Source of the DNA: Entomortierella parvispora E1425
Taxonomy: Eukaryota; Fungi; Mortierellomycota
Length of the DNA: 64,000 nt
NCBI GenBank assembly: GCA_020891255.1
Contig: BQFW01000006.1
Coordinates: 1,240,001-1,304,000, forward strand
Reading direction: 5' to 3'
Position numbers and translations under genes: made by a program. This document shows, piece after piece, positions 8,513 to 64,000 of this stretch. Position 1 is the first letter of the stretch. The number at the start of each line of letters is the position of its first letter. The notes beneath the pieces are model-generated. The model was given only the letters and a program-made list of their open reading frames with translations. It ran no database searches and was not told the DNA's origin.

Positions 8513-11500
8513 TCAGCATCTCTCCACGAGTCGGAAGCCTGCAAACACGAACGGGTAGTTGGCCTGGTACCAGTTGCGGAAACTGCGACGCTTCGCAAGA
8601 CGAGGATGCGTCGCCCAGGACGCGCCCAAGACCACCATGTGCTTCTCGTCAAAGAAATCAGTCGAGTAACCTGGGTACAGAGCCGAAGTCTTGAATCCTG
8701 GACCCAAAGGCGCAAACTTTGTACGCGTCCAATCCCAAAGACCACCTGGACCGCTAAAGTCCTTAATGGGCACGTCCGAAGTCGAAGAAGGGGAGGGTGC
8801 TTCGATCGTGGGGTACCACTGCCGGAAGCCAAAGTTCTCCAGGCCAGATCGAGGCACGCTCGACTGCTTCCACTTGAACACCATCGACAACTGTTGCTCC
8901 GTGGGCAACATGAACTGTTTCGATTGCTCCTTCGAGTACCAGTCTGCATATGCAGTTGCTTGCAGGTTGGAGCAAGAGACTGGCCAGTCGCCCGAGATGC
9001 GGATCGGTACAGGACCGTACACCGTCTTGATCGAGACCTCTTCCCCGTTGGCCAGCCAAGAAGCAGGAAGTCGGTCCTTTTGAGACAAACCACCAGTGGC
9101 GTTCAAGAACCTCATGTATTCGTTGTTGGTAACCTGGCGCGACTGGATCTTGAAGGCCGGGGTGGGCTCGGAGTGAACCTCAGGGTGCTCATTGTCCCAA
9201 CCAAAGGTTGAATTCAGGTCCTGTTTGTTTGCATCCAAAAGATCATCCGATTCCAAATCCAAGTGTCCCAACGACAAGAACTCTTTGTCCAGCTTGGAGG
9301 GGTCCACAGTGATCCAGGTGACAGGCGGCAGAACCGACCGGGATTCGAACGTCGCCATATTATCGGCCCAAGGTGCAGGCAGCGAGGGTGGAGGCAAGGT
9401 ATTGGGCGACTGGACCAACATGTAGATCAAGGTTTCCAAGTGCATCGCCTCATGTTCAAAAGCCATGAAGAGCACACGAGCCAACCGACGGTCAATTGGG
9501 TACTTGACAGGGTCGTTCAAGATGTTGAATAGACGTTCCCGAACTCGATCACGGAACTCAAGGATAGTCTCAATGGCTGGCCATTCGTCTGGAACCTCGG
9601 AATGGGCGTGGCACTTTGTGGGATCGTCCACGTCCGGGTCAATGCCTCGCTCAAAGATGACGTTGAAATGAGCCGGCTCCGAGAAGGGCTCCTTCAGGGC
9701 ACGAGAGAGTTGAGTGTCCAAGAAGACTGGGATATGACCAAGGTAGAACAGGAAGGGGTGGCGAAGAGCAATGGGCTTTTCAAGGAGCATGGAAGGGTGC
9801 TGGATCATTTGTGTCGTCACCACATCCCAAGACTTCCAAAGCTCAGTCCACTCTTGCTGACTAGGGCAGGTCTTTGCATCGGTGGACTTGAAGTAGAAGG
9901 GGGTCTTGCGGACGAGATGAAGGTCATAACGATCGCTAGAACTAGTCCATTGACCGACCTTGGTGAACTCAGTGTCCTCAAACAATGCCGCGGTCTCGGC
10001 CGGTGACCACTTGTAAGAGTACTCGACATTGATGAGCTCACCCTTGACGAAATCAATCTGGACATTGTTCTCCTCCTTTGGGGCCTTGAAGACGGTCGAG
10101 TGTGACTCTACAACCTGGTAGTAGGCTTCATGACGACCGACCTCAACATTGTACTGGGCGAAGTACTGGAACTTTTGTCGATCCATGAGAGACTGGTCGA
10201 AGATGACATTGATATGACCGAGTGCATTGAGGACAAACTCACGAGTGACCCCCTTGGTATCGTTGTACGCCAACGTAATCTCTTGAGCGTCGTTTCGGCG
10301 GTCAATACCGATTAACCAGTTATCGCCCACGTTGAGGGTCTTGCGGTATGAGGTGATAAAATCGCGCGCTTCCTCTCGGGTCAGGTTTCCGATCGAGGAC
10401 CCGAGCCAGAGAAGAGTCTTGGGGACTTCGGCCCCTAAGGAGCTCACAAAGGCCAATCCTTCTTCGTATGTACCCCAGAGACCTGCTGTCTTGACGTTGG
10501 AGAACTTGCCGAGGGACTTGAGAGACTGTGGGAAAAAAAGGGGGCATGAAAAAGGTGGTTTTGGTCAATTGCTTGAATGCAATATAGTACGTAAGGAATC
10601 AAACGTAAAAAAAGAAAGAATTAGGTGCGGTACACCGCCCTGCAGAGTGGAAACGATGCATGCGATGTGAAGAAACAAACACCTGGCCCCTGGAAAAAAA
10701 ACTAGCCCTGTACTTTGCGTAATAAAAGTAAAAATATCGAAAGAACAAAAAATTACAATGTGGAAACTGCGCTGCAAAGTGAATTGTGCTGATCTCCAGA
10801 AATGCGGTCTCGAGCCGTGCGACAAAAGCGTGTGAAAATAGTGGGGGGAATGGAGGGGGGATGGTGCATTAAAAAAAAGCCTCTCCCTCCTTTTCCGGAT
10901 GAATCGCACGTTGTTGTGTTTCTTGCAACCACAATGGTGACGCGAAGTTGCGACAGTCGACAGTTGAAAAAAGAAAGTGAGATAAGCGAAGAACACAGAC
11001 CACAGACCATATCGTTGGACCATGTTCTGGCGTCTGTTCTGGGTCACCGTGGAGAGATGCAGGTCATGCTCCAGCAATGAAAGAAAAATGAACCAAAGAA
11101 ATAATTCAAAAAAGAGCCTCTGTAAAGAAAGAAAATTGCTCCATGCAGTAAGGAGTGATGGCGTCAAATGACGGCACATTCTTGACCAAAAGATATGCAT
11201 GGAGAAGAAACAAGAGATTCGTCTTTACCTTGGTCAGCTCGTCCAGCATCAGATCCAGAGCGTAGTATCGGATGTTCTTGCGTCTCGATTCAAGAGCATT
11301 CAACAGCAGGACAGTTTTGCGAAGGGAACTGTTGGGACAAAATGAGAATAAAATAGTCATGCAGATAACAAAAGGGTTAGAAAGTTGGACAGACATCATG
11401 CAGACAAGCATACCCCCTTTGCCTTCTGCAAAAGAAAGAGATAATGAAGCGGTTAAACTTACCCTGCTCCAAGTTCTACAACAACACTGTTGTCGGGGAT

Positions 11501-46747: not shown

Positions 46748-47979
46748 TTAGTGCTTGAGGGGAGCAATTCCGACAGAAGGAGACGAGGTCTGGGAGAAGA
46801 CCACATAGTTGTTCTTGATGAAAACATCACCCAAGATCCAAAGGCCGTCTTGGCCGCCCTGGACACCCGAGAAGCAGTTCTTGCTGCCATCACCCACACT
46901 CTCATAGGCTAAATCAGCCACGGGAACGTTGAAGGTCTTGCCTCCGAGCTTGAAGCCAACGTTGGCAGTGCTGGTCGAGACGGAACAAGGAACCAACCAT
47001 CCGTTGTTGGGGTCGTTGGTCGATCCGGGAATCTTGGCGTGGATGGCAGCGGCAGCGGCATCACCGACAATGATTAAGGTCGTACCGGTGTCAATGATAC
47101 CCTGGGAGGTCTGCTTGAGCGAGGCGCCGTTGAAGGAAGCATCCTGGACCAAAATCTGCCAGTATCCCTTCTGGGTCACGGGAGTATAAGTCAAAGAGCC
47201 AGCGAACTTTGAGGAATCAATTCCACCAAAGGTGTAAGCACCACCCTTGCCCTTGAACAGACGTTCAGAAGGCAAGAAGACAGAGACAACAGGCTGAGCC
47301 AAGAGACCGGCAGCAATGGTGTTGTCGAGGAAAGTCTTGACACCAGAAACAGACTCAATGGTGTCGAATCCGAGACCAAAGAGACCGTTGGTGGGTCCAG
47401 AGGTGAACTCGGAGGACTCCTTAGTGGCAATGCCAAAGGTCTGACGTACGGAAATGCCTCCAACGCTGACAATATCGGAGGCGAGTGTACCAGAAGCCGA
47501 GGAGCCATCTCCGTAGGAAATCTGCCATTTGCGACCATCCTTCTTGTAGGTGGAGGACTTGGACGAAGTGTACTTATTGAACCAGATGTCGGACGAGCCC
47601 TATGGTACATTTTTTTTAAAGAAAAAGGTGAGTTCAAGTTTCAAATTGACATTATGTTGAATCCAACGTTGATATCAGGCTTCCTTACAGTGTCAAAGTC
47701 CAACTGAACGGTCTGGGCGGGGGTTCCGACCTTGACGGCACCGTAGTACTCGAGATCAGGGCTGACATCGGTGATGGGCTCAGAGCCGCTGGATCCGGCC
47801 TTGATGTTGAGCTGAGGGTAACGAGCATTCAACTTGCGGATCTGGGCAGGGGTGTTGTGCTTGAAGTTCTCGCGGCGGACCAAAGGGATATGATGACCAT
47901 CGGCGTTCTTGACGGGCGAGGCAGTGGCGAAGGCCAAGACAGCCGCAGCAGCCAAGGTAATGAAGGCGGTGGATTTCAT
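46748..47979 (-). CDS. Secreted A1 aspartic protease (rhizopuspepsin-like), 2 exons
   Basis: Signal/pro-peptide MKSTAFITLAAAAVLAFATA; first catalytic LDFDT|GSSD split by an intron; ISYGDGS; GLFGLGF; second catalytic IIDTGTT; ILGDVF. Confidence 0.96.
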
Positions 47980-48176: not shown

Positions 48177-48185
48177 GGGAGTGTC
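48177..48185 (+). repeat. Left 9-bp target-site duplication GGGAGTGTC
   Basis: Identical to 57423-57431 and directly abuts the TIR. Confidence 0.95.
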
Positions 48186-48310
48186 GGACTAGACTATTTG
48201 TCGGCCCGTCCGACAATTCTTATTTGTCGGCTCATTGCTCTTATTTGTCGGCTGCTCCCCCTTATTTGTCGGCTGCTCCCGTATATGTCGGTCGCTTTAT
48301 TTAAGTTAAA
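48186..48310 (+). repeat. Left TIR with five TATTTGTCG-like subrepeats
   Basis: GGACTAGACTATTTGTCGGCCCGTCCGACAA... matches the reverse complement of the right end, GGAAGCGTCTATTTGTCGGCCCGTCCGACAA... Confidence 0.93.
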
Positions 48311-49354
48311 TTGAGCCCCACTTAACTACAAATATTCTAGAGAACAAAAGTTGAAAGTGTAGTTGGATAGAAGTTGGAATCAAAAAGAGGTTGATGTTAA
48401 ATAGCTGGACACGCGTACTGATCCAGTTACAAGGCCCTCAGAGAAGGGATCATCAGCTTTGGACGAATATGAAAAGACGTTTTCACTCTCGAACTAAGAA
48501 AAATCATGACAAGTACGGATGTGAGCGTGGCGAGATTTTGACAAGGTCATCGTATTTGCAGCTCTTTCGCTTGTTCATCATTTTAGCCAGTTGAAGCTCG
48601 GTTAGTACCAAAAAGAAGCATCTAAAAATGATGCAGTCTATCACTAAAAGAGACCTTTGGATTCTCAATACGGTATCTCTTGTAGGGAAGGTGTCTTCCT
48701 CATCATCTTTGTTTTCTTTGAACTGCTAAACTGCATTCTAGACGTTTGGGATTTGGGAAGCGAATTCTCATTTTCAAAGTACGCGAAGGCTGTTGAAAGC
48801 CATGCCATTGTCCTTCACTAATATCATATCCATTGACTACTGCCGTAGTATCTGCAATTGACCCAGAAGGCACACTTGTATGATGAACAAGGTGCAAAAC
48901 TACAGCCAAGGTTGTTTGGATCTGCCTCTAAGCCAACACTACCCTGGTGTAAAAGGGTGCAATGGGAGAAAGATAGGGGAAAGTTGTCTTTGTCACATAC
49001 TTCTTTCCTACTATTTCTTCGCTGCTGCTTCTGCTACATGGACACTGGTTCCATACGAGCAGGCGAGAAAACTTCAGGAAAACCCGGAAGAGAACCAAAA
49101 AAAAAAAAACAGAAACCATCTATTTGCGAATATGACCACGCCAGGTTCGAACGACAAAGAGAGAGGGCTCGACCTCGACGAGAGCGCCTTCGGAGCGGCT
49201 AGCCCGTCTTTCCCTCCTCATGGTCCAGGCACGGGGCGGCTCGGGGCCGCTGCACCACCAGGGCATCTTTCGACTATAGTCACGTGACCACGCGATGCAG
49301 CCCTCCAACACAACAATTGCTTCATTTTATTACGAATCCATCACTCACAACGAG

Positions 49355-50914
49355 ATGTCTCAAAAACGAAATCCATCCCCACAACCTGCTTCTGCGACGC
49401 TCTCGAGAGAACAGACTGTCCATCTGAAGCACTACCGGAATATATTTGAGGATCCTGAAGATGTCGATTCACTCCAGTCCGGTAGGGTTCTTTCAGTGGA
49501 AGACAGCATTCGGGAAGGTAATTAATTGAGTCAATTGAGATTCCTTTGCTCTCCTGGCATTTCACTGAACTACCCTTTTCCTCATTTAGCTGACCTCTCA
49601 ACTGAAATGCCTGCCACTGGGTCAAAGAGGTACTGTGGACTAAAAGCCCTTCCCAGTGGTGGAAACCAACGGAGGATATTCTTGGCCGTCCAATTCCTTG
49701 TTCAGCGACTCCAACAATTCTGTGCTAGTGCGCAGGATGAACTGAGAGGCATGAGTCTGACGAGAGGCGGCGAATTGTATACCCAGCTTTCTACAGAGCT
49801 AGAGCGTGCCGAGCCGAGTCTGAGAGGCGTTACAGCAGGTGCCCTATATTCGGCTGTTGGCAGACTCTGTGCTGACTACAACGCCTATGAGAAATTAGCC
49901 ACTTCCGCGACTGGGGTGGATCTCGCATTCTCAACTCGGTTGTTGGAGCTCTGTCGTCTTTTGCGCGATTACGACCGAACTTTATTAAGGATCAAGCAGG
50001 AAACATCGGAACTCACGGCGGAAGAGAGGGCGCGCGTGGCATCTCCCGCAACAGCAACCCGACAGAATCTTGTCACAGAGGATCGCAGACGGAGAATCAA
50101 GAAACTAAGATTTGATGATACTGTATCGCGCGGCAGTGAAGACGATGACAACGACGATGAGCCGGAAGACGAGGAAGAAGAGAATGAGGATGAGGATGGA
50201 CATTCAGCGGGCGAACAATATGATAGCGAAACACGAAGCTCCAATAGGGCCGACGTCACGCATGTTCGAGCTGCCCCAGGCGATACGAAAAGTCATCGTG
50301 GAGTTGCTTTGCCCATTCATCAGCAGCAACAAGAGCTACTCTACCCTCCAGCTACGTTGTCAGCCATGGTACCTTCGCCCAAACACCGCTCTGTGACACC
50401 ACCTCGGAGCACAAAAACAACAAAGACAATGCGGATGCCTCGGGGATTTGCGAAGGAGCAAAGGAGAATAGCGGACGAAGTGCAGTCAATAAGACAGGTC
50501 GTAGCGATTGAGACTACCGCTAGAATTAAGGAACTTAGAAGGAACATGACAGACAACACAACCATCATTGAAGATCTCGGCAGGAACACAGTATCCAAGA
50601 TCGACGATTTGAATAGGAGTATCGACGATTTGAATAGGAATATCGACGATTTGAATAGGAATACCGTTGCTGTCATTTCAGTGCTGTCGGATTTGAGGTC
50701 AGAAATGCATGGAACGTTTCTCACATTCAGAAATGAAATCCGTGATTTACAGGATATTGTATGGAAATCTTACTCAAGGACTTCTGGCCTACCTCAGCCT
50801 CAGCCTCACTCGACCTCCATACAATGGCCTCCAATGCTGGCGCGCCCTCAGACAACATTTCAACCCAGTATATCTCTGGCCACAGCCGCAGCACCACGGC
50901 GACCAGAAAGCTAG
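49355..50914 (+). CDS. Cargo protein: putative trihelix/Myb-SANT-like N-terminal region, acidic linker and coiled coil (Harbinger ORF1-like architecture), 2 exons
   Basis: A 72-nt intron (49518-49589) joins ORF 49295-49525 in frame to the 462-aa ORF. GALYSAVGRLCADYNAYEKLATSATG...LLELCRLLRDYD loosely resembles transposon-associated Myb/SANT-like proteins. It also has a D/E tract and IDDLNRx heptads. The start could be 49295. Confidence 0.6.
50600..50662 (+). repeat. 21-bp tandem repeat x3 encoding heptads IDDLNRS/IDDLNRN
   Basis: ATCGACGATTTGAATAGGA(G/A)T repeated three times. Confidence 0.92.
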
Positions 50915-50937
50915 CGACCATGCAGTGATACAATTTA

Positions 50938-51978
50938 TTACAATAAATCTTGACTTGGAAGGGATTCTGGCATCCACTGGTGTTTTGGAGTAAGGTAATT
51001 TTCAAGAGTTGGCGGATCCATCCCGAAATACGAGGTGACGCTGTTCCCTCTACGAATGCAAGTGAGAATATTGGCGAACAGAGCAGACACGATGTAGTAC
51101 TTAGTCTGTCTCATTTTCAGAATGTTACTATGGGCCAACCAGCTCCAGTTATTGTCAATGAAGTCAAATCCTTTGTCAGCACAAAGAAGGGGACGTCTCA
51201 TGGATAAGTTGAAGCGGATCTCGGACTTGCTGAGGACTGGACCGCGATATGGACGACAAACTTGAAAGCAATCAGGATAATTCCCATCACCATAAATGAC
51301 CATCGGAGCGCCAAGAGTGTTATGACAGTGGGCATTCAAAATGATTGGAAGACAAGACTTGGTCAAAGTGACCGTGTCAGCTTCTGCTCCCGGATGAGGA
51401 CCGCTCAAATGGGCAATTATACCATCTGGACAGCAAACCGACTGATATTTCATTGAGTGCATCTGTTTCTGGGTAGAATATGTCAGGTTTGGCCTTTCCT
51501 TAGGTCGGCAGATCTCAATATGAGTCCAGGAAACAAATCCCCAGCAGTTTGTCAGCCTCCCTTTCATAAACTGAACTCGCGCTGCTAAACCCTCCAGATA
51601 TTCATCTCGTAGGCGGGTGTGGTCAAACTCCAAAAGATGCTTCCATTCGGAAAGGATGTACTCGTTAATGGTCTTGATTGCGTGCGACACAAAAGGAGAA
51701 TCACGAGAAAAGAGAGCGGCCATATCCTTGATAAGATGAGGATAACTCAATCGAAAGCAAAGCATGCATAGCGCCTGCAGTCTTGGAACGATCGCTCCAT
51801 TTGACAACTTTAAGGTTATTGGAAGAGCCAAGGCATTGGCAACCTGGAGGAGCTCAGTCCAAGTGAACCGATACGTCTTTTCAGGGCAGAGAGCTAACCA
51901 GGGAGCATCAAAAGGGAGGTCGTAGGCCAATGCAACATGGCGGCTAAGCTCGGCAAAGAAAGGGTGATCCTCGTCCAT
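50938..51978 (-). CDS. PIF/Harbinger (DDE_Tnp_4, HARBI1-like) nuclease homolog, full length but with altered catalytic triad
   Basis: YRF...ALALP...ALCMLCFRLSYP (HTH region), NCWGFVSWT (family: NCWGFIDGT), MKYQSVCCPDGIIAHLSGP, IYGD..YP, FNLSM and YFGMDPPTLENYL. An upstream intron ends just before the ATG. Confidence 0.88.
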   Translation of the reverse strand: MDEDHPFFAELSRHVALAYDLPFDAPWLALCPEKTYRFTWTELLQVANALALPITLKLSNGAIVPRLQALCMLCFRLSYPHLIKDMAALFSRDSPFVSHAIKTINEYILSEWKHLLEFDHTRLRDEYLEGLAARVQFMKGRLTNCWGFVSWTHIEICRPKERPNLTYSTQKQMHSMKYQSVCCPDGIIAHLSGPHPGAEADTVTLTKSCLPIILNAHCHNTLGAPMVIYGDGNYPDCFQVCRPYRGPVLSKSEIRFNLSMRRPLLCADKGFDFIDNNWSWLAHSNILKMRQTKYYIVSALFANILTCIRRGNSVTSYFGMDPPTLENYLTPKHQWMPESLPSQDLL

Positions 51979-52438
51979 CTACTGTCCAATAAAAAAAAGG
52001 AAGTTAGAGCAATTGAGAGTGAGTTCCACGGACAAGAGGTGTACTTAACTCACCTGAAGATTCACAGTAATGGGGTTGATTGTAACTAAGTAAGGCAGGT
52101 GCAGATAATAGTAGTAGAAAAGACGAAAGTATGTGCCGTATTTATTGCTCAGCGGAATGTTTCTTTTTGGGCAAGAACTTGAACACGAGAAATAAATTCA
52201 AGAGTGAAGTGCGAAAGTAGGCACCTTCGACTCAAAAACGAGAAGAAGGTTCAGGGGCTCAGGGGTAATTTCTTGTGAGCACCGTGAGAATCGGCCAAAA
52301 ATCAGTACTTGACGTTTTTTTTTGTGGCAGCCGTTACGCGTTTAAGGCACTAAAAGGCCTTGCGGCCAACTGAACCTCCACCACCACCTCTTATCTCCCT
52401 TAACCACCAAATACCCTTTTGCTTGGAAACCTCACCTC

Positions 52439-55400
52439 ATGTCGCTCCCTGAAAGCCATGTTAACGGCTCGCTCGAGCTTCTCGACGACGCGGATCTTCT
52501 TGAATTCTGGTGGCAGAGACATCTCACGGGCTGGGAGTTAATCCATATGGAGTTCCCACCTGTCCTTACGAAAGTCACTCCCACGTTCTTCACCAACGAA
52601 GAGCGACTTGCGACCTACTTCGACGAGCTTCAAGTGACACTATCTGACCTGAGTATCAACAGGCCGATCCCTCACCCAGCATCAGTCGCGGCCGCGATAG
52701 AACTGATTAGTAACGATTCTCGACCGGGTGTCGTACTTATTGGCAAGGTGGGATTCGTCTCCTTTCCCGCCCTTCAGGCCATGAAGCAAATCCATGACCT
52801 AATGGATATGTCAGCTTTGCTTCGTGATATGTTGACTTGGTTAAATGGCCCTGTTAAGATCGGAGCGGAAGTCGTTCGGAAAATGAGGTCCATTCTTCTT
52901 CAGAGTCCCAACATTTTGGGGTGAGTTATACTGTACATCCATAATCCCTGGCCATGGCAGTTTGTTTTTAACACATCTAATCTGGCCGTTTTTATCCTTA
53001 GACACGGCTTTAAGGCTTACAATGGTACCGTCACCAGTATCACCGACCTCCTCCAGCTTAGGCACGAAGAGTGGCTGTCGGGACAAGTCATTGACGCGGT
53101 TATGAAAGAGTTTGCAGCTCAAACCAGCGGCGATGATATCTTCGTTCCTTCGACAGCCCTTCGTATTAATCTGAATGTCCATGAGCGGGAGCAACAAAAG
53201 AAGCAGTGGGACTACATCAAGACCGCCATCCTTCATTGCGCCATTGCCGAAAGGAAGGCATTTGCGATTGTCAACATTGGACGCCATTGGGCTCCTGTGG
53301 TCATCGACTTTGCCGCCAAACGAACGTCCTTCGGCCACTCGCTGGATGGGGGACAATCGGATAAATTAGGTGAGGAGGTTGGTCGCACCATTGCCAGGAT
53401 GTTGAAACATTGCATGGTGCCAGAATATACGGCATTCAAGAAAGTCCATGAATTGGAGGTACCCCAACAAGGCATCGATGGAGGCTCCTGTGGTGTCATT
53501 GCTCTTAATGTTATTGAGAGCGAGTGCCGGCCATTTCATCTCATAAAAGCCTGGACGGTGGCCACTAGCAAGAACCATCGGCTGTGGTATATGTATGTTC
53601 TGACCGGACAAGACTGGACGAACAAAGTACGTATATGTTGCCGTTGATCACTTTCTACTGAGTCCAATTACTTACATACTGTCCAATTGTCCTTGCAGGG
53701 CGTGTCTTCCTTGTTTATCGAGGACCCCACCCCTCCAGACCAGTCTCAACAGTCACCTTTTATCATCAGAAAATCTCACGGAATAACTCAGGTGACTCAC
53801 AATACCGCCATAAAAAGGCGCGATGAAAGAGTTGCCGACAGAGTTGTCAATATCGCTTCCGATATCCCGGTTGTTCAAGGGAAGGGCGGGGATCATGACA
53901 TCCCTGTTATTGAAGAGAAGGAGAAGGAGAAAAGAGAGGGAACCCCTGACATCCTTGATGCTCAGGATGGGGAAGACCTTTATATCTACTACGACCGATA
54001 TCTCCTCAGCGATAATCGCTTTCATTGTCCATCGGAGGATTATGATGACGACCTTGATGACAACGACCATGATTACGACGATCGGGATCTTGAGGGCAAT
54101 CTCTATTCCAACTATGAAAGCCCGTGTGGAGGGGAGGCTGATGCTCGTGAAGATGAGCGCGAACCCTGGTATGAAGAAGAATCCGATTGTGAGGACCACC
54201 AGGACTCCAAGAATTTCCAGGATACAGAACATGAAAGGGTTTTCGTTCCTATCGAGAAGGTTCGTTGCACAAAAAAAAAAAAAAAAAAAAAAAAAGAGGA
54301 GCTGTGTCTGATGTTGTTCTGCCATTTCTAGAATCCACACACTCCTTTGCCCGAGGAACTGGACTCTCAAATCTTCAATTCTTTCTCGGATGCCATAAAT
54401 GCCGTTCGACAGTGGTCCCTTTCGTGTGGATTTGATATTCGAATCGCCTCAAGCAAAAAAGCTATCACGCGAGTGGATGAGTACGTTTCCTTGCAATGCT
54501 GGCGTGTGCGAGGCAAGGCCGAACGACTAACGCAGTCCCTTTTTTACAGAGGTTCTAGAATGTACAAAAGGGAGGAAGCATAGTCCTAAGAAGACCTCTG
54601 TACCTGAGTTGGAAAGAAATAAGACCTCGATTCGCTGCGACTGCAAATGGTACATTCAACTCCGTGCAGCAAGCAAGGACGGGAAGGACTGTACCGTTTA
54701 TCGGAAGAACGACACTGCGGCTCACAACCACAAGATGATAGCTCACGCCGAGATATTTAGTCCCTCGAGACAGAGGTTAACAACACCCATGAGGGAATGT
54801 GCTCAAGAACTTTCAGCAGCAGGGGCGAGCATGCCTGTTATCAGGGAAGTTCTCAAGAGGCGAAACCCCGAGCGGTACTTCTCTGGGAGAAGAGTGTCGA
54901 ACGCAATGGCAAGACGAACTACCGGCTCTCACGGCGCGAACAACGCCCAGCGTCTGGTAGCAATGTTGACGGGTTTCCGCAAGAAGGATGAGCGATGGTA
55001 TGCTAAAGTTCAGACGGACAACAATTCGGTCATCAGACGCGTCTTTTGGATGGATCCACTCCAAAGGGATCTCTATTCACGATACCATGATGTAGTGATG
55101 AACGACACAACATACAACACCAACCGCTTCAAAATGCACCTCAACGTCACCACGATTGTCGATGCTGAGGGTGCAACCAGAGTTGTGGCATGCGCCCTTC
55201 TTAGCAAGGAGACAAGATCAGATTTTTTATTTGTTCTTTACCATTTATTCAAGGCGAACGGCAATCGGCATCCGCATGTGGTCGTTAGCGACGATGACAA
55301 GGCATTTGAGTCGGCGCTCATTAAGTTGTCCCCCAATACTCACATGGTAAACTGTCTGTGGCACTTTTCGAAGAATCTTTCGAACATCTCCTGCCAGGTC

Positions 55401-56802
55401 GGAAAGGAAGAGTACGAAAAGTTCAAAAACGGATTCTGGATTGCTCAGCGAACTATAACTCGGCGAAATTTTGAAGAAGAGTGGCAGAGAACTCTGGACT
55501 TTGCATTCCCTGATTTGGTCCCCGGGAGTCCACTTGACAAGAGGCTACAGTATATCTACAGTCGAAGCCCTTATTGGGCTAAGCCATGGGTGGGGACACT
55601 CCTCACGCTTGGGATACAGGCTTCACAGCGAGTTGAGAAAGCACACCATCTGATCAAACTCAAGGCGAACGGCAACACAGGCTTGGATGAACTCTTCCAA
55701 GTCATTCAAAAGAAGATCGCGGATGAGAGCATCCAAAATAGGTACCTCGCTTTCCTCGACGACTCCAAAGACGGTGTCAAGGAGAGGTATAAGGGATATG
55801 ATACCTTTCAAGCCGTCATATCGGAAAACGAGCGATTCCTAGGACGATTCGGTCAAAACAAGATGAAAGAGGAAATCTCCTCTTCTTTTTCTTATGAAGC
55901 AGAACTCCATGAGCACGATGAAGTAAGTAGAGTAAATGCTGGGGAACGGTCGCCTGTCAACTATAATCCATCTAACCTTTTTTTTTTTTTTGTAATGGCT
56001 GACCAAGTTGCGACGATATTTTAGGGACCCAGAGGACGAGGGGCAGATACGTCTATCTACTCGACAAGAAGTTCGCCTGTCGACATTGGGGGCCTTGCTA
56101 AGTGAACTGAGCGACTCGGAGATTGAGAGTATCCACCTTGTTTCTCATCTCGAAGAAAACGACGCATCGTGGGTTCTTCTCTTCAGGGATGGAGGATATC
56201 TGTGCACATGTCTCAAGTTGCAGAATGTGGGGATTGTGTGCAAACACTTTTTCTACATGATGCGGAGAGATCATGCCTTTAGATACCATATCCAACTGGT
56301 GCCCATGCGGTGGTTCCAAGAGCGCTGGCAAGACACCGAGAACCTCAATCTTTCGTCTCGGCCCTTCTTGTCTGTTTCTCCGGTTACAAGAGGACCCGAC
56401 CTTGCCTTCCTAGGTCCCCGACATCCTTCTCTGTCCGAAAAGCGCGTTCGGACTCCATGCTTGACGTATATGGAATCTGCTTCGAAGCTATTCCCCGAGT
56501 ACGGTGCTATCCCCGCTGTAGAACGAAGAGAGCAGGCTCGGCGAAGCCGCTTTGCTGAGTTGCAGGGCAATTCAAAGGAGTTGGTGCGAATGGGAGCAGA
56601 CCATCCAAAGCTGGCAGCTATTTACGCTAAAGCGATGAAAAAAGCCGAGGCACAGATGAAAAAAGTAATTGAAGAAATGACGGGCCTGCAGATCGTAAAA
56701 GACCCGATAGTTTTACCGCCCAAGGGGAAGGTCCCAACAAAAAGGATCAAGTCCAGCCAAGAATTATCCATGGCTTCCAAGAAGTCCAAAGGCAACTTCT
56801 AG
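52439..56802 (+). CDS. Predicted 1332-aa Ulp1-like protease / FAR1 / MULE DDE / SWIM fusion transposase (6 exons)
   Basis: Exons 52439-52920, 53002-53626, 53699-54259, 54332-54480, 54536-55922 and 56008-56802 total 3999 nt in one frame with GT-AG introns. Motifs: DLLQLRHEEWLSGQVID, GRHWAPVVID and QQGIDGGSCG (Ulp1); GFDIR...RCDCKW...HNH (FAR1); NDTTY, VSDDD, CLWHF and QRVEK (DDE); CTC-x9-CKH (SWIM). Confidence 0.82.
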
Positions 56803-57287
56803 ATATCTACATACAACGGCCTGCAGATAGTGTAGAATTAGAGCAGGAAAGAGGAGAATAAGAGGAGAATAATATCCCAATCTTGAGAGGTGGTAATGGA
56901 TAATTTTTGTAAAGCCCTGTTTTCCTAATAAAAGAACATAAACTTATATTAATAGTGTGGAGTATTACTGTCTTCATGCAGCGGACAATTGAAGGCAGCG
57001 GACAATTGTAGGAGAGATGATCATTGAAGCCATGTCTCCCAAAAAAAAAAAAAAAAAAAAAAGAAAAAAAAGTTGTGCTTTTTTGAGCTGCAGGCTTCAG
57101 AAAGGATGGATACCAGGAAAAGAGGGTGAGAGGACTTCAAAGAGCAGAATGGAGATGCCCCTACGACCGGAGTCTTCTTCGTGATATTTACAACTGAAGT
57201 AGGATGAAGGTCATGATCGTAGGGGAGAACGCAGGCTGCTTTGCCAGTTTCGTATTGTGGCGTCAAAGCGCTTGGGAATGCTAGTGT

Positions 57288-57422
57288 AGTTAACTTAAAA
57301 TCAGCGGCCGACAGATAGGGACATGGCCGACAAATAAGGGGGAACGGACGACAAATAAGAGCAATTGAGAGCAGGGACGACAAATAAGATCTTGTCGGAC
57401 GGGCCGACAAATAGACGCTTCC
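57288..57422 (-). repeat. Right TIR with five CGACAAATA-like subrepeats
   Basis: Reverse-complement match to 48186-48310. Confidence 0.93.
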
Positions 57423-57431
57423 GGGAGTGTC
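57423..57431 (+). repeat. Right 9-bp target-site duplication GGGAGTGTC
   Basis: Identical to 48177-48185. Confidence 0.95.
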
Positions 57432-63341: not shown

Positions 63342-64000
63342 TCACCCTTCGACTAAATGGTCTTCACCGTCTTCGCCGTCGTCGCTGTCGTCGCTCGGGT
63401 GGTTGTCGTCGTCTTCGTTTCGGAGGCCGATGTTCTTGATATGGTACTCGAAATCGTAAGGGGACACATTCTCAAATTTTTGCTGCCAGCATCGGTACAC
63501 GTCTCCGGTTTCGAGTCCATCCGGGTGCTCGAGACAGATGTTGTGCAAAATCAAGCAGGTCATGATCCAGTCCAAGGCTCTATCCGTGTCATAGCTTTTG
63601 TTGATCTCCATGGGCAACCCTTGCAAGGAACTCCACTTCAGTCGGAGCCATCCAAGTGCGTAGACCATCATGTCGCGAGCCTCCTCATGCAGCGCATTGA
63701 ATTGAAGCTCATCGTCTGTGGCCTTCGATTCCTCATAGGGAGAGATGACGGTAGGGGTGATATCATACTCGATATCAGCCAACAAGAACTCTTCCTCGGC
63801 GAAATAGTCCCTTTTGTGAGTGTAAAGACGAGTGTTGCAATACGCCTTCCAGTCACCAACCGATCCTTTGTATCCCGTGGACGCAAATGTAAATCGACCC
63901 GTATGATCGCAGACGACTGTGCACCCCATCGCATGCCCATGTTTCTTGGTCTTCCATGCTGCAGTATCATAGGCAGGGGCTGATTCGAAAGAAAAGGCGG
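63342..64000 (-). CDS. Second PIF/Harbinger (DDE_Tnp_4)-like nuclease ORF, 5'-truncated by the window edge
   Basis: The frame is open to the edge: ...KTKKHGHAMGCTVVCDHTGRF...GYKGSVGD...YFAEEEFLLADIEY...FNALHEEARDMMVYALGWLRLKWSSL...WIMTCLILHNIC, then an acidic tail. Confidence 0.8.
   Translation of the reverse strand, partial: AFSFESAPAYDTAAWKTKKHGHAMGCTVVCDHTGRFTFASTGYKGSVGDWKAYCNTRLYTHKRDYFAEEEFLLADIEYDITPTVISPYEESKATDDELQFNALHEEARDMMVYALGWLRLKWSSLQGLPMEINKSYDTDRALDWIMTCLILHNICLEHPDGLETGDVYRCWQQKFENVSPYDFEYHIKNIGLRNEDDDNHPSDDSDDGEDGEDHLVEG

What the first reader, a model, noticed from the sequence alone, without database searches (positions are those of the whole stretch)
48186..57422. Intact 9.2-kb composite MULE carrying a possible chromatin/anti-silencing toolkit (Ulp1-like protease plus Harbinger-derived gene pair)
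Seen: TIRs, a perfect 9-bp TSD, a transposase with intact DDE, and two extra convergent genes. Established: plant MULEs can carry Ulp1-like proteases (Kaonashi) or anti-silencing factors (VANC of VANDAL). Harbinger-derived nuclease plus Myb-like pairs (ALP1/ALP2, HDP1/HDP2, HARBI1/NAIF1) act as chromatin regulators in plants and animals. Inference: this element may combine a de-SUMOylase-like domain with an HDP/ALP-like pair to counter host silencing. I know of no description of this combination in early-diverging fungi, but I cannot search.
Basis: partly seen in the sequence, partly recalled or inferred. Interest (0 to 1): 0.88.

Follow-up and report, generated by a model that had tools for sequence, protein, structure and literature searches.

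The report
Mutator transposon carrying co-opted Harbinger genes
A recently active 9.2-kb Mutator-type jumping gene of the soil fungus Entomortierella parvispora carries the two genes of a Harbinger transposon in all six copies; the cutting enzyme has lost key catalytic residues, the DNA-binding partner is expressed, and both genes show purifying selection, so one transposon appears to have co-opted another's genes.

Summary
The window is Entomortierella parvispora contig BQFW01000006. Positions 48186-57422 are a complete MULE. It has imperfect TIRs of about 125 bp with 21-bp subterminal repeats and a perfect 9-bp TSD. It encodes a MURA-like transposase, a Ulp1/C48-like protease, and a tightly convergent Harbinger gene pair.

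- **Copies:** I fetched five more copies, 99.8-99.9% identical over the whole length including cargo. Four are uninterrupted, each with its own 9-bp TSD; one is split by an LTR element. The composite therefore transposes as a unit.
- **Origin of the cargo:** It comes from a Harbinger lineage whose free members have their own TIRs. Those TIRs are absent here.
- **Nuclease:** It lost the first catalytic Asp (D to S) and the R..VEW motif, and evolved about 2.5 times faster than its closest relative. Its ORF is still intact.
- **Partner:** It has a Sap1-like Myb-type DNA-binding domain plus a coiled coil. It is transcribed and spliced.
- **Selection:** An old immobile relic gives dN/dS 0.38 for the partner and 0.32 for the nuclease.

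The anti-silencing role is untested. The scan had already noted other copies of this family on other contigs. No description of this combination was found.

The parts
48177..48185 (.). Left copy of the 9-bp target-site duplication GGGAGTGTC
   Evidence: It is identical to 57423-57431. Four other full copies have different perfect 9-bp TSDs.
48186..48312 (+). Left terminal inverted repeat, about 125 bp, with 3-4 copies of a 21-bp subterminal repeat (core CTTATTTGTCGGC)
   Evidence: The unitig break and alternative flanks fall exactly at 48186.
48880..49287 (+). Left-arm ORF of 135 aa with no recognisable domain. The sub-segment 48917-49071 is also present in diverged form elsewhere in the genome, and RNA contigs touch it.
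   Evidence: Its function and coding status are unresolved.
49355..50914 (+). Cargo gene 1, the Harbinger partner (495 aa, protein P0018). It has two exons with a 72-nt GT..AG intron at 49516-49587. Layout: an N-terminal Myb-type (Sap1-like) DNA-binding domain at about residues 80-195, an acidic region, then a coiled coil with IDDLNRN repeats.
   Evidence: The RNA contig is spliced exactly as in the NCBI model. It is homologous to the convergent partners of free Harbingers. The fold match to the Sap1 DNA-binding domain has Z 9.4. dN/dS is 0.38 overall and 0.17 in the DNA-binding domain.
50938..51978 (-). Cargo gene 2, a Harbinger (DDE_Tnp_4) transposase-like ORF of 346 aa. It is intact but carries D150S, R264L, V267A, E268D and W269K, so it is very probably nuclease-dead. 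NCBI did not annotate it, and it is absent from the RNA contigs.
52439..54331 (+). Ulp1/C48-like protease gene (NCBI model of 579 aa with introns). The catalytic core lies at 53102-53647, with His-Trp, Asp, Gln-Gln and Ser-Cys-Gly invariant in distant relatives.
   Evidence: The gene order Ulp1-like then MULE is conserved in relatives L003-L005.
54609..56802 (+). MURA-like transposase. It has an N-terminal CxC..HxH zinc finger, a MULE DDE domain (D166, D228/D230, CxxH) and a C-terminal SWIM CxC..CxH motif. A probable intron lies around 55914-56062 and contains a T14 tract.
   Evidence: At 55364 this copy has T4, which gives an open frame. The four other aligned full copies have T5 in the assembly.
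57290..57422 (-). Right terminal inverted repeat with subterminal repeats
57423..57431 (.). Right copy of the 9-bp target-site duplication GGGAGTGTC

Best explanation
This is one of six near-identical copies of an autonomous-type Ulp1-bearing Mutator-like element. An ancestor of the family took in a complete two-gene Harbinger transposon, most simply by nested insertion. The Harbinger ends were then lost, so the pair can only move with the MULE. The Harbinger transposase lost catalytic residues. Both genes were nevertheless kept open and under purifying selection.

Shown:
- The composite transposes as a unit.
- The pair derives from a Harbinger lineage whose free members have their own TIRs.
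- The catalytic residues are substituted.
- The partner has a Myb-type DNA-binding fold plus a coiled coil.
- The partner is transcribed and spliced.
- dN/dS is well below 1 for both genes.

Inferred: the partner acts as a dimeric sequence-specific DNA-binding factor, possibly together with the dead nuclease as in the host-domesticated Harbinger pairs. It would serve the MULE as an accessory factor for transcriptional or chromatin regulation, targeting, or help in transposition. The Ulp1-like protease is an older core component of this MULE clade. Counter-silencing is one possible version of this role and has not been shown.
For: 1. Copies. Six annotated copies of the partner gene exist. Copies at five other loci are 99.8-99.9% identical over all 9237 bp; four are uninterrupted and each has its own perfect 9-bp TSD, and the fifth is split by an LTR retroelement. 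Unitig depth is 450-480 across TIR, cargo and Ulp1, against 77-109 in the flank.

2. Harbinger origin. Free relatives L014-L017 carry the same tightly convergent nuclease-partner pair. Their partners are homologous to P0018 (E 7.5e-31 and 2e-11). They have their own TIRs sharing the motif TAGGCAGGTTnnGCA. P0020 and P0021 show the same gene layout. No such TIR motif lies inside the element.

3. Nuclease.
- D150 is S here, but D in 129 of 134 homologues.
- E268 is D here, but E in 126 of 134.
- R264 is L here, but R in 127 of 134.
- All five closest free relatives keep D-D-E.
- The lineage shows a 2.3-2.7-fold excess of unique changes (chi-square 8-13).

4. Selection.
- The relic L012 shares the derived CADKGF motif and a remnant of the MULE right end, so the composite predates the split between relic and active family.
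- Partner: dN/dS 0.38 overall (Fisher p 1e-6), 0.17 in the DNA-binding domain, with in-frame indels only.
- Nuclease remnant: dN/dS 0.32 (p 7e-5).

5. Expression. An RNA contig spliced at a 72-nt GT..AG intron covers the partner gene. The diverged relic copy is also present in the RNA run. The genome paper confirms that an RNA library was made from the same culture.

6. Fold. The model has pLDDT 72. It matches the Sap1 DNA-binding domain at Z 9.4 over 102 of 105 residues, against 4.9 for the next unrelated hit. Ten of the top 30 AFDB clusters are Myb/SANT, MADF or trihelix families. Language-model features point the same way.
Against: - No experiment or dataset here links the cargo to transposition or silencing.
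- The six copies are almost identical, so selection cannot be measured within the active family.
- The dN/dS values average over both branches of a single comparison with one relic.
- The nuclease ORF has zero depth in the RNA contigs, and AUGUSTUS with cDNA hints did not call it in any copy. A nuclease-partner complex may therefore not form under the culture condition sampled.
- Distant MULE relatives (transposase 35-38% identical) have Ulp1-like plus transposase but no Harbinger hit, so the cargo is not needed by the clade as a whole.
- The partner is intact and expressed in an immobile relic. That fits a host-side role as well as a transposon-side role.
- Pfam does not recognise a Myb domain, and the Foldseek E-values are weak (0.1-0.9).
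Confidence: 0.55

Rival explanations
1. Passive hitchhiker. A Harbinger inserted into a master MULE copy and lost its ends, and it is simply copied along. The intact ORFs and low dN/dS are leftovers of selection that acted while the pair still served Harbinger transposition, or reflect too little time to decay.
For: The copies are 99.8-99.9% identical, so the burst is very recent and gives no test within the family. Relatives L003-L005 lack the cargo. The nuclease shows accelerated evolution and lost conserved residues, as expected under relaxed constraint. It is not detectably transcribed.
Against: The relic L012 already carries the derived CADKGF motif and a MULE right-end remnant. The composite and the motif loss therefore predate a divergence of dS 0.16-0.30, during which substitutions stayed strongly biased towards synonymous changes in both genes. 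In the same interval the relic's nuclease collected 8 deletions, all frame-breaking, in about 570 bp, while the active lineage's 1041-bp ORF collected none. The partner is expressed and correctly spliced.
Confidence: 0.2
2. Specific anti-silencing toolkit. The partner, the dead nuclease and the de-SUMOylase act together on chromatin to keep the element transcriptionally active. This would be analogous to HDP1/HDP2 in the IDM complex or to VANC of VANDAL elements.
For: The architecture parallels host-domesticated Harbinger pairs that act on chromatin (PMC5339849, PMC7282668). MULEs are known to encode anti-silencing factors (PMC5735166). The partner is a DNA-binding-type protein that is expressed while the element has recently amplified.
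Against: The argument is entirely by analogy. There is no VANC homologue and no detected chromatin-reader or chromatin-modifier domain. Nuclease expression was not detected. The Ulp1 domain is an old feature of many Mutator elements with no demonstrated anti-silencing role (PMC2836005). The silencing pathways of Mortierellomycota were not examined.
Confidence: 0.15
3. Host-side or repressor role. The partner, especially the immobile relic copy EMPS_03913, is being domesticated by the fungus or acts as a transposase-less repressor that restrains the MULE or Harbinger families.
For: The relic L012 has lost its left end, transposase, Ulp1 and half the nuclease. It still keeps a 488-aa partner ORF with in-frame indels only, a conserved upstream CACGTG-containing motif, and RNA-level expression.
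Against: No orthologue of the partner was found outside E. parvispora apart from Harbinger-borne ones. The six mobile copies outnumber the relic. Selection on the nuclease remnant, which later decayed in the relic, points to transposon-level rather than host-level constraint.
Confidence: 0.1

Closest known systems
Ulp1-bearing Mutator-like elements (Kaonashi/KI-MULEs of Arabidopsis, melon and rice; Ulp1 MuDR elements of hydra and lancelet)
   Same: Long TIRs, a 9-bp TSD, a MURA-like DDE/SWIM transposase and a C48/Ulp1 protease domain encoded in the same element. The Ulp1-then-transposase order is conserved in distant relatives of this element (PMC2836005).
   Different: The host is a Mortierellomycota fungus. 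The C48 domain is so diverged that it falls just under Pfam's threshold. The element also carries a Harbinger-derived gene pair, which is not reported for these families.
Host-domesticated Harbinger pairs: ALP1/ALP2 and HDP1/HDP2 (Arabidopsis), HARBI1/NAIF1 (vertebrates), and co-domesticated PIF pairs in insects
   Same: A transposase-derived protein and its Myb-like partner are retained together. The Harbinger ends are lost. Catalytic residues are substituted, as in ALP1. Purifying selection is evident (PMC7282668, PMC5339849, PMC9710019).
   Different: Here the pair is not a fixed single-copy host gene pair. It rides inside another, actively transposing DNA transposon and is present in six mobile copies. 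The interaction between the two proteins and any chromatin role are untested.
Accessory genes of Mutator elements: mudrB of maize MuDR; VANB/VANC of Arabidopsis VANDAL
   Same: A MULE that encodes, besides its transposase, extra element-specific proteins, one of which is a DNA-binding factor (VANC binds non-coding repeats of its own element; PMC5735166, PMC10398659).
   Different: There is no sequence relationship to VANC or MURB. The accessory genes here have a traceable origin in a different transposon superfamily.
Schizosaccharomyces pombe Sap1
   Same: The best structural match for the partner's N-terminal domain (Z 9.4, rmsd 3.2 A over 102 of 105 residues). The overall layout is also the same: a Myb-type helix-turn-helix with an extra fourth helix, followed by a coiled-coil dimeriser (PMC6053445).
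   Different: Sequence identity is only 13-14% and no homology is detectable by sequence. Sap1 is an essential host replication and switching factor, not transposon-encoded.
Free PIF/Harbinger elements of the same lineage (soil-metagenome loci L014-L017, P0001, P0020, P0021)
   Same: The same tightly convergent nuclease-partner gene pair, with 35-57% (nuclease) and 24-44% (partner domain) identity.
   Different: They are about 3.1-3.4 kb long, with their own TIRs and an intact D-D-E triad. The window's pair has neither.

Membership tests
Mutator superfamily (MULE) | 9-bp (8-11 bp) target-site duplication | tested here: met
   Perfect 9-bp TSDs, each different, flank the window copy and four other full-length copies.
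Mutator superfamily (MULE) | Long terminal inverted repeats | tested here: met
   The ends match over about 127 bp at 82.7%, and the terminal 32 nt at 88%. Subterminal 21-bp repeats are present.
Mutator superfamily (MULE) | MURA-like DDE transposase (MULE domain, CxxH, SWIM zinc finger) | tested here: met
   Pfam MULE at E 3.6e-19 covers the full profile. D166, D228/D230 and C249..H252 are invariant across homologues. A SWIM CxC..CxH motif lies in the C-terminal ORF.
Ulp1-bearing MULEs (KI-MULE-like) | C48/Ulp1 protease domain with catalytic His-Asp-Cys encoded in the element | tested here: met
   Pfam C48 is sub-threshold (18.6 bits against 20.7). However, His-Trp, Asp, Gln-Gln and Ser-Cys-Gly are invariant in MULE relatives only 32-34% identical. 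Weak SENP1 alignments cover the catalytic region. Activity was not tested.
Autonomous PIF/Harbinger element | DDE_Tnp_4 transposase with an intact D-D-E triad | tested here: not met
   The domain is present (E 9.6e-14). But D150 is S, E268 is D, and the flanking R, V and W residues are replaced. The closest free relatives keep all of them.
Autonomous PIF/Harbinger element | Own short TIRs flanking the two genes (and a 3-bp TSD) | tested here: not met
   No convincing inverted repeats bracket the pair. The lineage's TIR motif TAGGCAGGTTnnGCA has no match with 3 or fewer mismatches inside 48186-57422.
Autonomous PIF/Harbinger element | Second gene encoding a Myb/SANT-like DNA-binding protein | tested here: met
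   The partner is homologous to the partners of free Harbingers. It has a Myb-type fold, with Sap1 at Z 9.4 and Myb/SANT, MADF and trihelix AFDB clusters among the hits. Pfam itself finds nothing.
Host-domesticated Harbinger pair (ALP1/ALP2, HDP1/HDP2, HARBI1/NAIF1 type) | Immobile, single-copy host genes with orthologues across species | tested here: not met
   The pair sits inside a mobile element present in six copies. No orthologues were found outside E. parvispora.
Host-domesticated Harbinger pair (ALP1/ALP2, HDP1/HDP2, HARBI1/NAIF1 type) | Purifying selection on both proteins after loss of transposition function | tested here: met
   dN/dS is 0.38 for the partner and 0.32 for the nuclease C-terminal half against relic L012, which already shares the derived motif. 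This is a single pairwise comparison.
Host-domesticated Harbinger pair (ALP1/ALP2, HDP1/HDP2, HARBI1/NAIF1 type) | Physical interaction of the two proteins and incorporation into a chromatin complex | not testable with these tools
   Needs co-immunoprecipitation or yeast two-hybrid and proteomics.
VANDAL/VANC-type anti-silencing MULE | VANC-family protein that binds element repeats and causes loss of silencing marks | tested here: not met
   No ORF of the element matches any such family. The DNA-binding protein present is of Harbinger origin. Epigenetic effects cannot be tested here.
Pack-MULE | Non-autonomous MULE carrying fragments of host genes | tested here: not met
   The element encodes its own transposase. 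The cargo is two complete transposon-derived genes.

The most novel reading that the evidence does not exclude
One DNA transposon has domesticated the protein machinery of another. The MULE family would depend on, or profit from, a nuclease-dead Harbinger transposase and its Myb-type partner as a trans-acting DNA-binding complex, for example to counter silencing, to activate its own promoters, or to choose targets. This would be a transposon-level equivalent of the ALP1/ALP2 and HDP1/HDP2 host domestications. It would also be a living intermediate showing how such pairs lose catalysis before hosts adopt them; the relic EMPS_03913 may be a first step towards host adoption.
Probability: 0.3. Interest if true: 0.85.

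Novelty: new variant of a known kind. Interest (0 to 1): 0.68.

Why it matters
Harbinger transposase and Myb pairs have been domesticated repeatedly by plant, vertebrate and insect hosts as chromatin regulators. How a pair loses catalysis and gains a new role is not known. Here the same transition is caught inside another, still active transposon: ends lost, catalytic residues replaced, both ORFs under purifying selection, DNA-binding partner expressed. The fungus can be cultured and its genome is available.

This gives a tractable system in which to ask what a nuclease-dead Harbinger pair does. It allows a test of whether transposons recruit each other's proteins as accessory factors. It also allows a test of whether the immobile relic copy is an early step towards host domestication. 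For annotation, it shows that a Harbinger-like ORF inside a MULE need not be a meaningless nested insertion.

Tried and rejected
- **Nested intact Harbinger.** Rejected. No inverted repeats bracket the pair, and the lineage-specific TIR motif is absent.
- **Cargo unique to this copy.** Rejected.
- **Link to the second DDE_Tnp_4 gene 6 kb downstream** (window 63342 onward). tblastn found no similarity at E 1e-3.
- **Word-index searches.** For the nuclease they gave one hit only. Exact look-up of the ORF found nothing, because it is not annotated.
- **PDB sequence search with the nuclease.** No hits.
- **Single-sequence structure of the partner domain.** Too poor to use, pLDDT 52. The 6-sequence alignment was needed.
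- **Atlas shape search.** Uninformative. Swiss-Prot AFDB hits were weak.
- **Metagenome scan with the partner protein.** Found nothing.
- **Partner C-terminal regions.** They show no significant similarity between lineages. L001 has no readable partner fragment.
- **TIRs in the MULE relatives L003 and L005.** None recognisable, so absence of cargo there rests on L005's 2.1 kb upstream of the Ulp1-like ORF only.
- **dN/dS among the six copies.** Not possible. There are about 8 substitution sites in total, and all indels lie in homopolymers of a Nanopore assembly. Short-read unitigs contradict the assembly at 52315.
- **Shared DNA motif between MULE and Harbinger ends.** The MULE subterminal motif does not occur in the free Harbinger loci L014-L017, so this gives no hint that the partner binds the MULE ends.
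- **RNA coverage of the transposase half.** Read laying could be run only once, so this was not mapped. Only a 0.26 share of sampled words is held by the RNA run.

Full report
**Source.** The MULE transposase ORF is 100% identical to a protein of Entomortierella parvispora. The locus lies on contig BQFW01000006.1 of assembly GCA_020891255.1; window coordinate = L002 coordinate + 44830. The genome paper reports a Nanopore assembly polished with Illumina reads. It also reports one RNA-seq library from mycelium, used as hints for AUGUSTUS (PMC8759367).

**The observation.**
- The element runs from 48186 to 57422.
- The two ends match over about 127 bp at 82.7%, and the terminal 32 nt at 88%. Each end carries 3-4 copies of a 21-bp subterminal repeat with the core CTTATTTGTCGGC.
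- GGGAGTGTC abuts both ends.
- Pfam finds a MULE/ZSWIM-RNaseH transposase domain at 54609-56024, DDE_Tnp_4 at 50938-51978 (minus strand), and a sub-threshold Peptidase_C48 at 53102-53647.
- The ORF at 56008-56802 holds a SWIM CxC..CxH motif and is homologous to the ORF that follows the transposase in relatives. The transposase therefore spans both ORFs, probably across an intron that contains a T14 tract.
- D166, D228/D230 and the CxxH motif are invariant among homologues.
- The C48 signature residues (His-Trp, Asp, Gln-Gln, Ser-Cys-Gly) are invariant among three MULE relatives only 32-34% identical.

**Copy number and mobility.**
- The partner gene belongs to a 90% cluster with six E. parvispora accessions.
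- Fetching these loci gave the window's own copy plus five others on different contigs.
- Four of them (L007, L008, L009, L011) align to all 9237 bp at 99.8-99.9%. L006 is the same element interrupted by a retroelement insertion of about 5.07 kb.
- Every complete copy starts and ends at the same bases and has its own perfect 9-bp TSD.
- Short-read unitigs give depth 450-480 uniformly over TIR, cargo and Ulp1, against 77-109 in the flank. They break exactly at 48186 into other flanks.
- The composite has therefore transposed as a unit at least five times, very recently.
- Differences among copies are about 8 substitution sites plus homopolymer-length indels. The unitigs contradict the assembly at one of these (52315) and run unbroken over others. 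Most indels are therefore likely Nanopore errors in a repeat.
- One indel matters. At 55364 the window copy has T4, which keeps the transposase frame that is colinear with relatives. The four other aligned full copies have T5, and NCBI called a MULE gene only in the window copy. Whether this difference is real could not be resolved.

**Origin of the cargo.**
- A sensitive search found 2799 homologues of the nuclease ORF.
- The closest are P0001 at 57% identity, then loci L014-L017 at 35-44%, from soil metagenomes.
- In L014, L015, L017 and L013, and in the P0021 contig, the nuclease gene is followed within 10-36 bp by a convergent gene.
- The convergent ORFs of L014-L017 are homologous to the window's partner. 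BLASTP gives E 7.5e-31 for L014 and 2e-11 for L015. phmmer and jackhmmer recover all four and nothing else.
- These elements are 3.1-3.4 kb long with their own TIRs, which share the motif TAGGCAGGTTnnGCA.
- Inside the MULE there is no such motif and no convincing inverted repeat around the pair.
- The cargo is therefore a whole Harbinger coding module without its ends.
- Distant MULE relatives (L003-L005, transposase 35-38% identical) keep the order Ulp1-like, transposase, C-terminal ORF but give no Harbinger hit. L005 has 2.1 kb upstream of its Ulp1-like ORF without it. The protease is therefore old core equipment and the Harbinger pair a later acquisition.

**The nuclease.** Aligned with 134 homologues:
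- The first catalytic Asp is Ser (D in 129 of 134).
- The second Asp is kept.
- The catalytic Glu is Asp (E in 126 of 134).
- The flanking R, V and W of the R..VEW motif are L, A and K.
- All five closest free relatives keep the canonical residues.
- The window lineage has 34-44 unique changes against 14-19 in P0001 (chi-square 8-13). Its branch length is 0.85 against 0.24. It has lost 7 of 34 highly conserved columns.
- The 346-codon ORF is still open, with no variant site among the five aligned copies.
- It has zero depth in the RNA contigs and is not annotated in any copy. Contigs can miss weak expression.

**The partner.**
- An RNA contig of 1402 nt joins 49515 to 49588 across a 72-nt GT..AG intron. 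This is exactly the NCBI model of 495 aa.
- Run X2 is labelled 'DNA?' but behaves as the RNA library. It has adaptor loose ends and spliced contigs, and it gives no coverage of the flank or of most of a six-copy element.
- Pfam finds nothing.
- Language-model features of residues 58-212 point to Myb_DNA-bind_4/3 and MADF clusters at scores of 0.82-0.86, which is a lead only.
- A model built on the 6-sequence alignment has pLDDT 72 and pTM 0.67.
- Its best PDB matches are the four Sap1 DNA-binding-domain entries. Foldseek gives probability 0.98. VIA-align gives Z 8.6-9.4 and rmsd 3.2 A over 102 of 105 residues, with the next unrelated hit at 4.9.
- Ten of the top 30 AFDB clusters are Myb/SANT-like, MADF, Myb-like or trihelix families.
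- Sap1's domain is a Myb-type helix-turn-helix with a fourth helix, followed by a coiled-coil dimeriser (PMC6053445). The partner has the same layout: domain, acidic stretch, then a coiled coil with IDDLNRN repeats.

**Selection.**
- A seventh locus, L012 (EMPS_03913), is an old relic. It aligns to window 49355-51498 at 86% and then directly to 57056-57384, the right-end region with subterminal repeats. It therefore derives from the composite by internal deletion and lacks the left arm.
- Its nuclease remnant shares the derived CADKGF motif. It has eight deletions, all frame-breaking (26, 10, 1, 1, 11, 10, 1 and 1 nt). Its substitutions nevertheless give dN/dS 0.32 (Sd 26, Nd 34; Fisher p 7e-5).
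- Its partner gene is a clean 488-aa ORF with in-frame indels only. dN/dS is 0.38 overall (p 1e-6), 0.17 in the DNA-binding domain, 0.28 in the coiled coil, and about 1 in the disordered parts.
- The relic's partner sequence also appears in the RNA run.
- A 14-bp block containing CACGTG upstream of the start codon is the only conserved upstream sequence.
- Both cargo proteins were therefore constrained after capture and after the E-motif change. In the relic the partner outlived everything else.

**Interpretation.**
- Firmly supported: an active Ulp1-MULE family carries a captured, end-less, nuclease-compromised Harbinger module that has been selectively maintained.
- Inferred: it serves the MULE as a DNA-binding accessory factor.
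- Untested: the anti-silencing version, which rests on analogy with HDP1/HDP2, ALP1/ALP2 and VANC.
- Ulp1 domains in Mutator elements are well known in plants and animals (PMC2836005). C48 is treated as an accessory domain in a survey of fungal DNA transposons (PMC5751038).
- I found no paper describing a MULE that carries a Harbinger-derived pair. These were searches of the open-access library only.
- The scan's first-stage notes had already flagged other copies of this family on other contigs. I confirmed independently that such copies exist.

Noticed in passing
L012:10001-12379 (contig BQFW01000005.1, gene EMPS_03913): An old immobile relic of the composite. It has an intact, expressed 488-aa partner gene, a nuclease remnant riddled with frame-breaking deletions, and a right-end remnant. 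The left arm, Ulp1 and transposase are missing. It could be an early step towards host domestication or a repressor copy.
   Followed up: partly
window 55364 (T4) versus L007, L008, L009, L011 (T5): In the assembly, only the window copy has an uninterrupted transposase frame and a called MULE gene. The four other aligned full copies carry one extra T. This is either one autonomous copy among defective ones or a Nanopore homopolymer error. Illumina reads would decide.
   Followed up: partly
L006:14968-20036 (contig BQFW01000001.1): One copy of the composite is interrupted, near the poly-A tract at the end of the Ulp1 gene, by an insertion of about 5.07 kb that encodes RVT_1, RNaseH and integrase (an LTR retroelement). 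The total of about 14.3 kb matches the scan's note s1-173359.
   Followed up: partly
window 49279-49292 and L012 about 9930-9945: A palindromic block containing CACGTG (TAGTCACGTGACC), about 65 bp upstream of the partner start codon, is the only upstream sequence conserved between the active copies and the relic. It is a candidate promoter element.
   Followed up: no
window 48917-49071 (left arm, within ORF 48880-49287): This segment of about 150 bp has extra unitig depth (up to 1112 against 475) and diverged variants in both the DNA and the RNA runs. A related sequence is therefore repeated and transcribed elsewhere in the genome. Its identity is unknown and it has no Pfam hit.
   Followed up: partly
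window 63342-64000 and beyond (L002:18512-21166, minus strand): A second, unrelated DDE_Tnp_4 gene (NCBI model of 776 aa) lies about 6 kb downstream of the MULE. It shows no detectable similarity to the cargo nuclease at E 1e-3.
   Followed up: partly
window 48186 relative to 46748-47979 (minus strand): The element sits about 200 bp upstream of the start of an aspartic protease gene (PF00026), in its presumptive promoter region.
   Followed up: no
L009:2128-8292 (contig BQFW01000008.1): Directly upstream of another copy of the composite lie a 981-aa Myb_DNA-binding gene and an 879-aa MULE/SWIM gene. This looks like a different MULE family next door.
   Followed up: no
window 52315-52323: The assembly has T9 here, but the short-read unitig (depth 458, all copies) has T8. 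This is direct evidence of residual homopolymer errors in the repeat copies of this assembly.
   Followed up: yes
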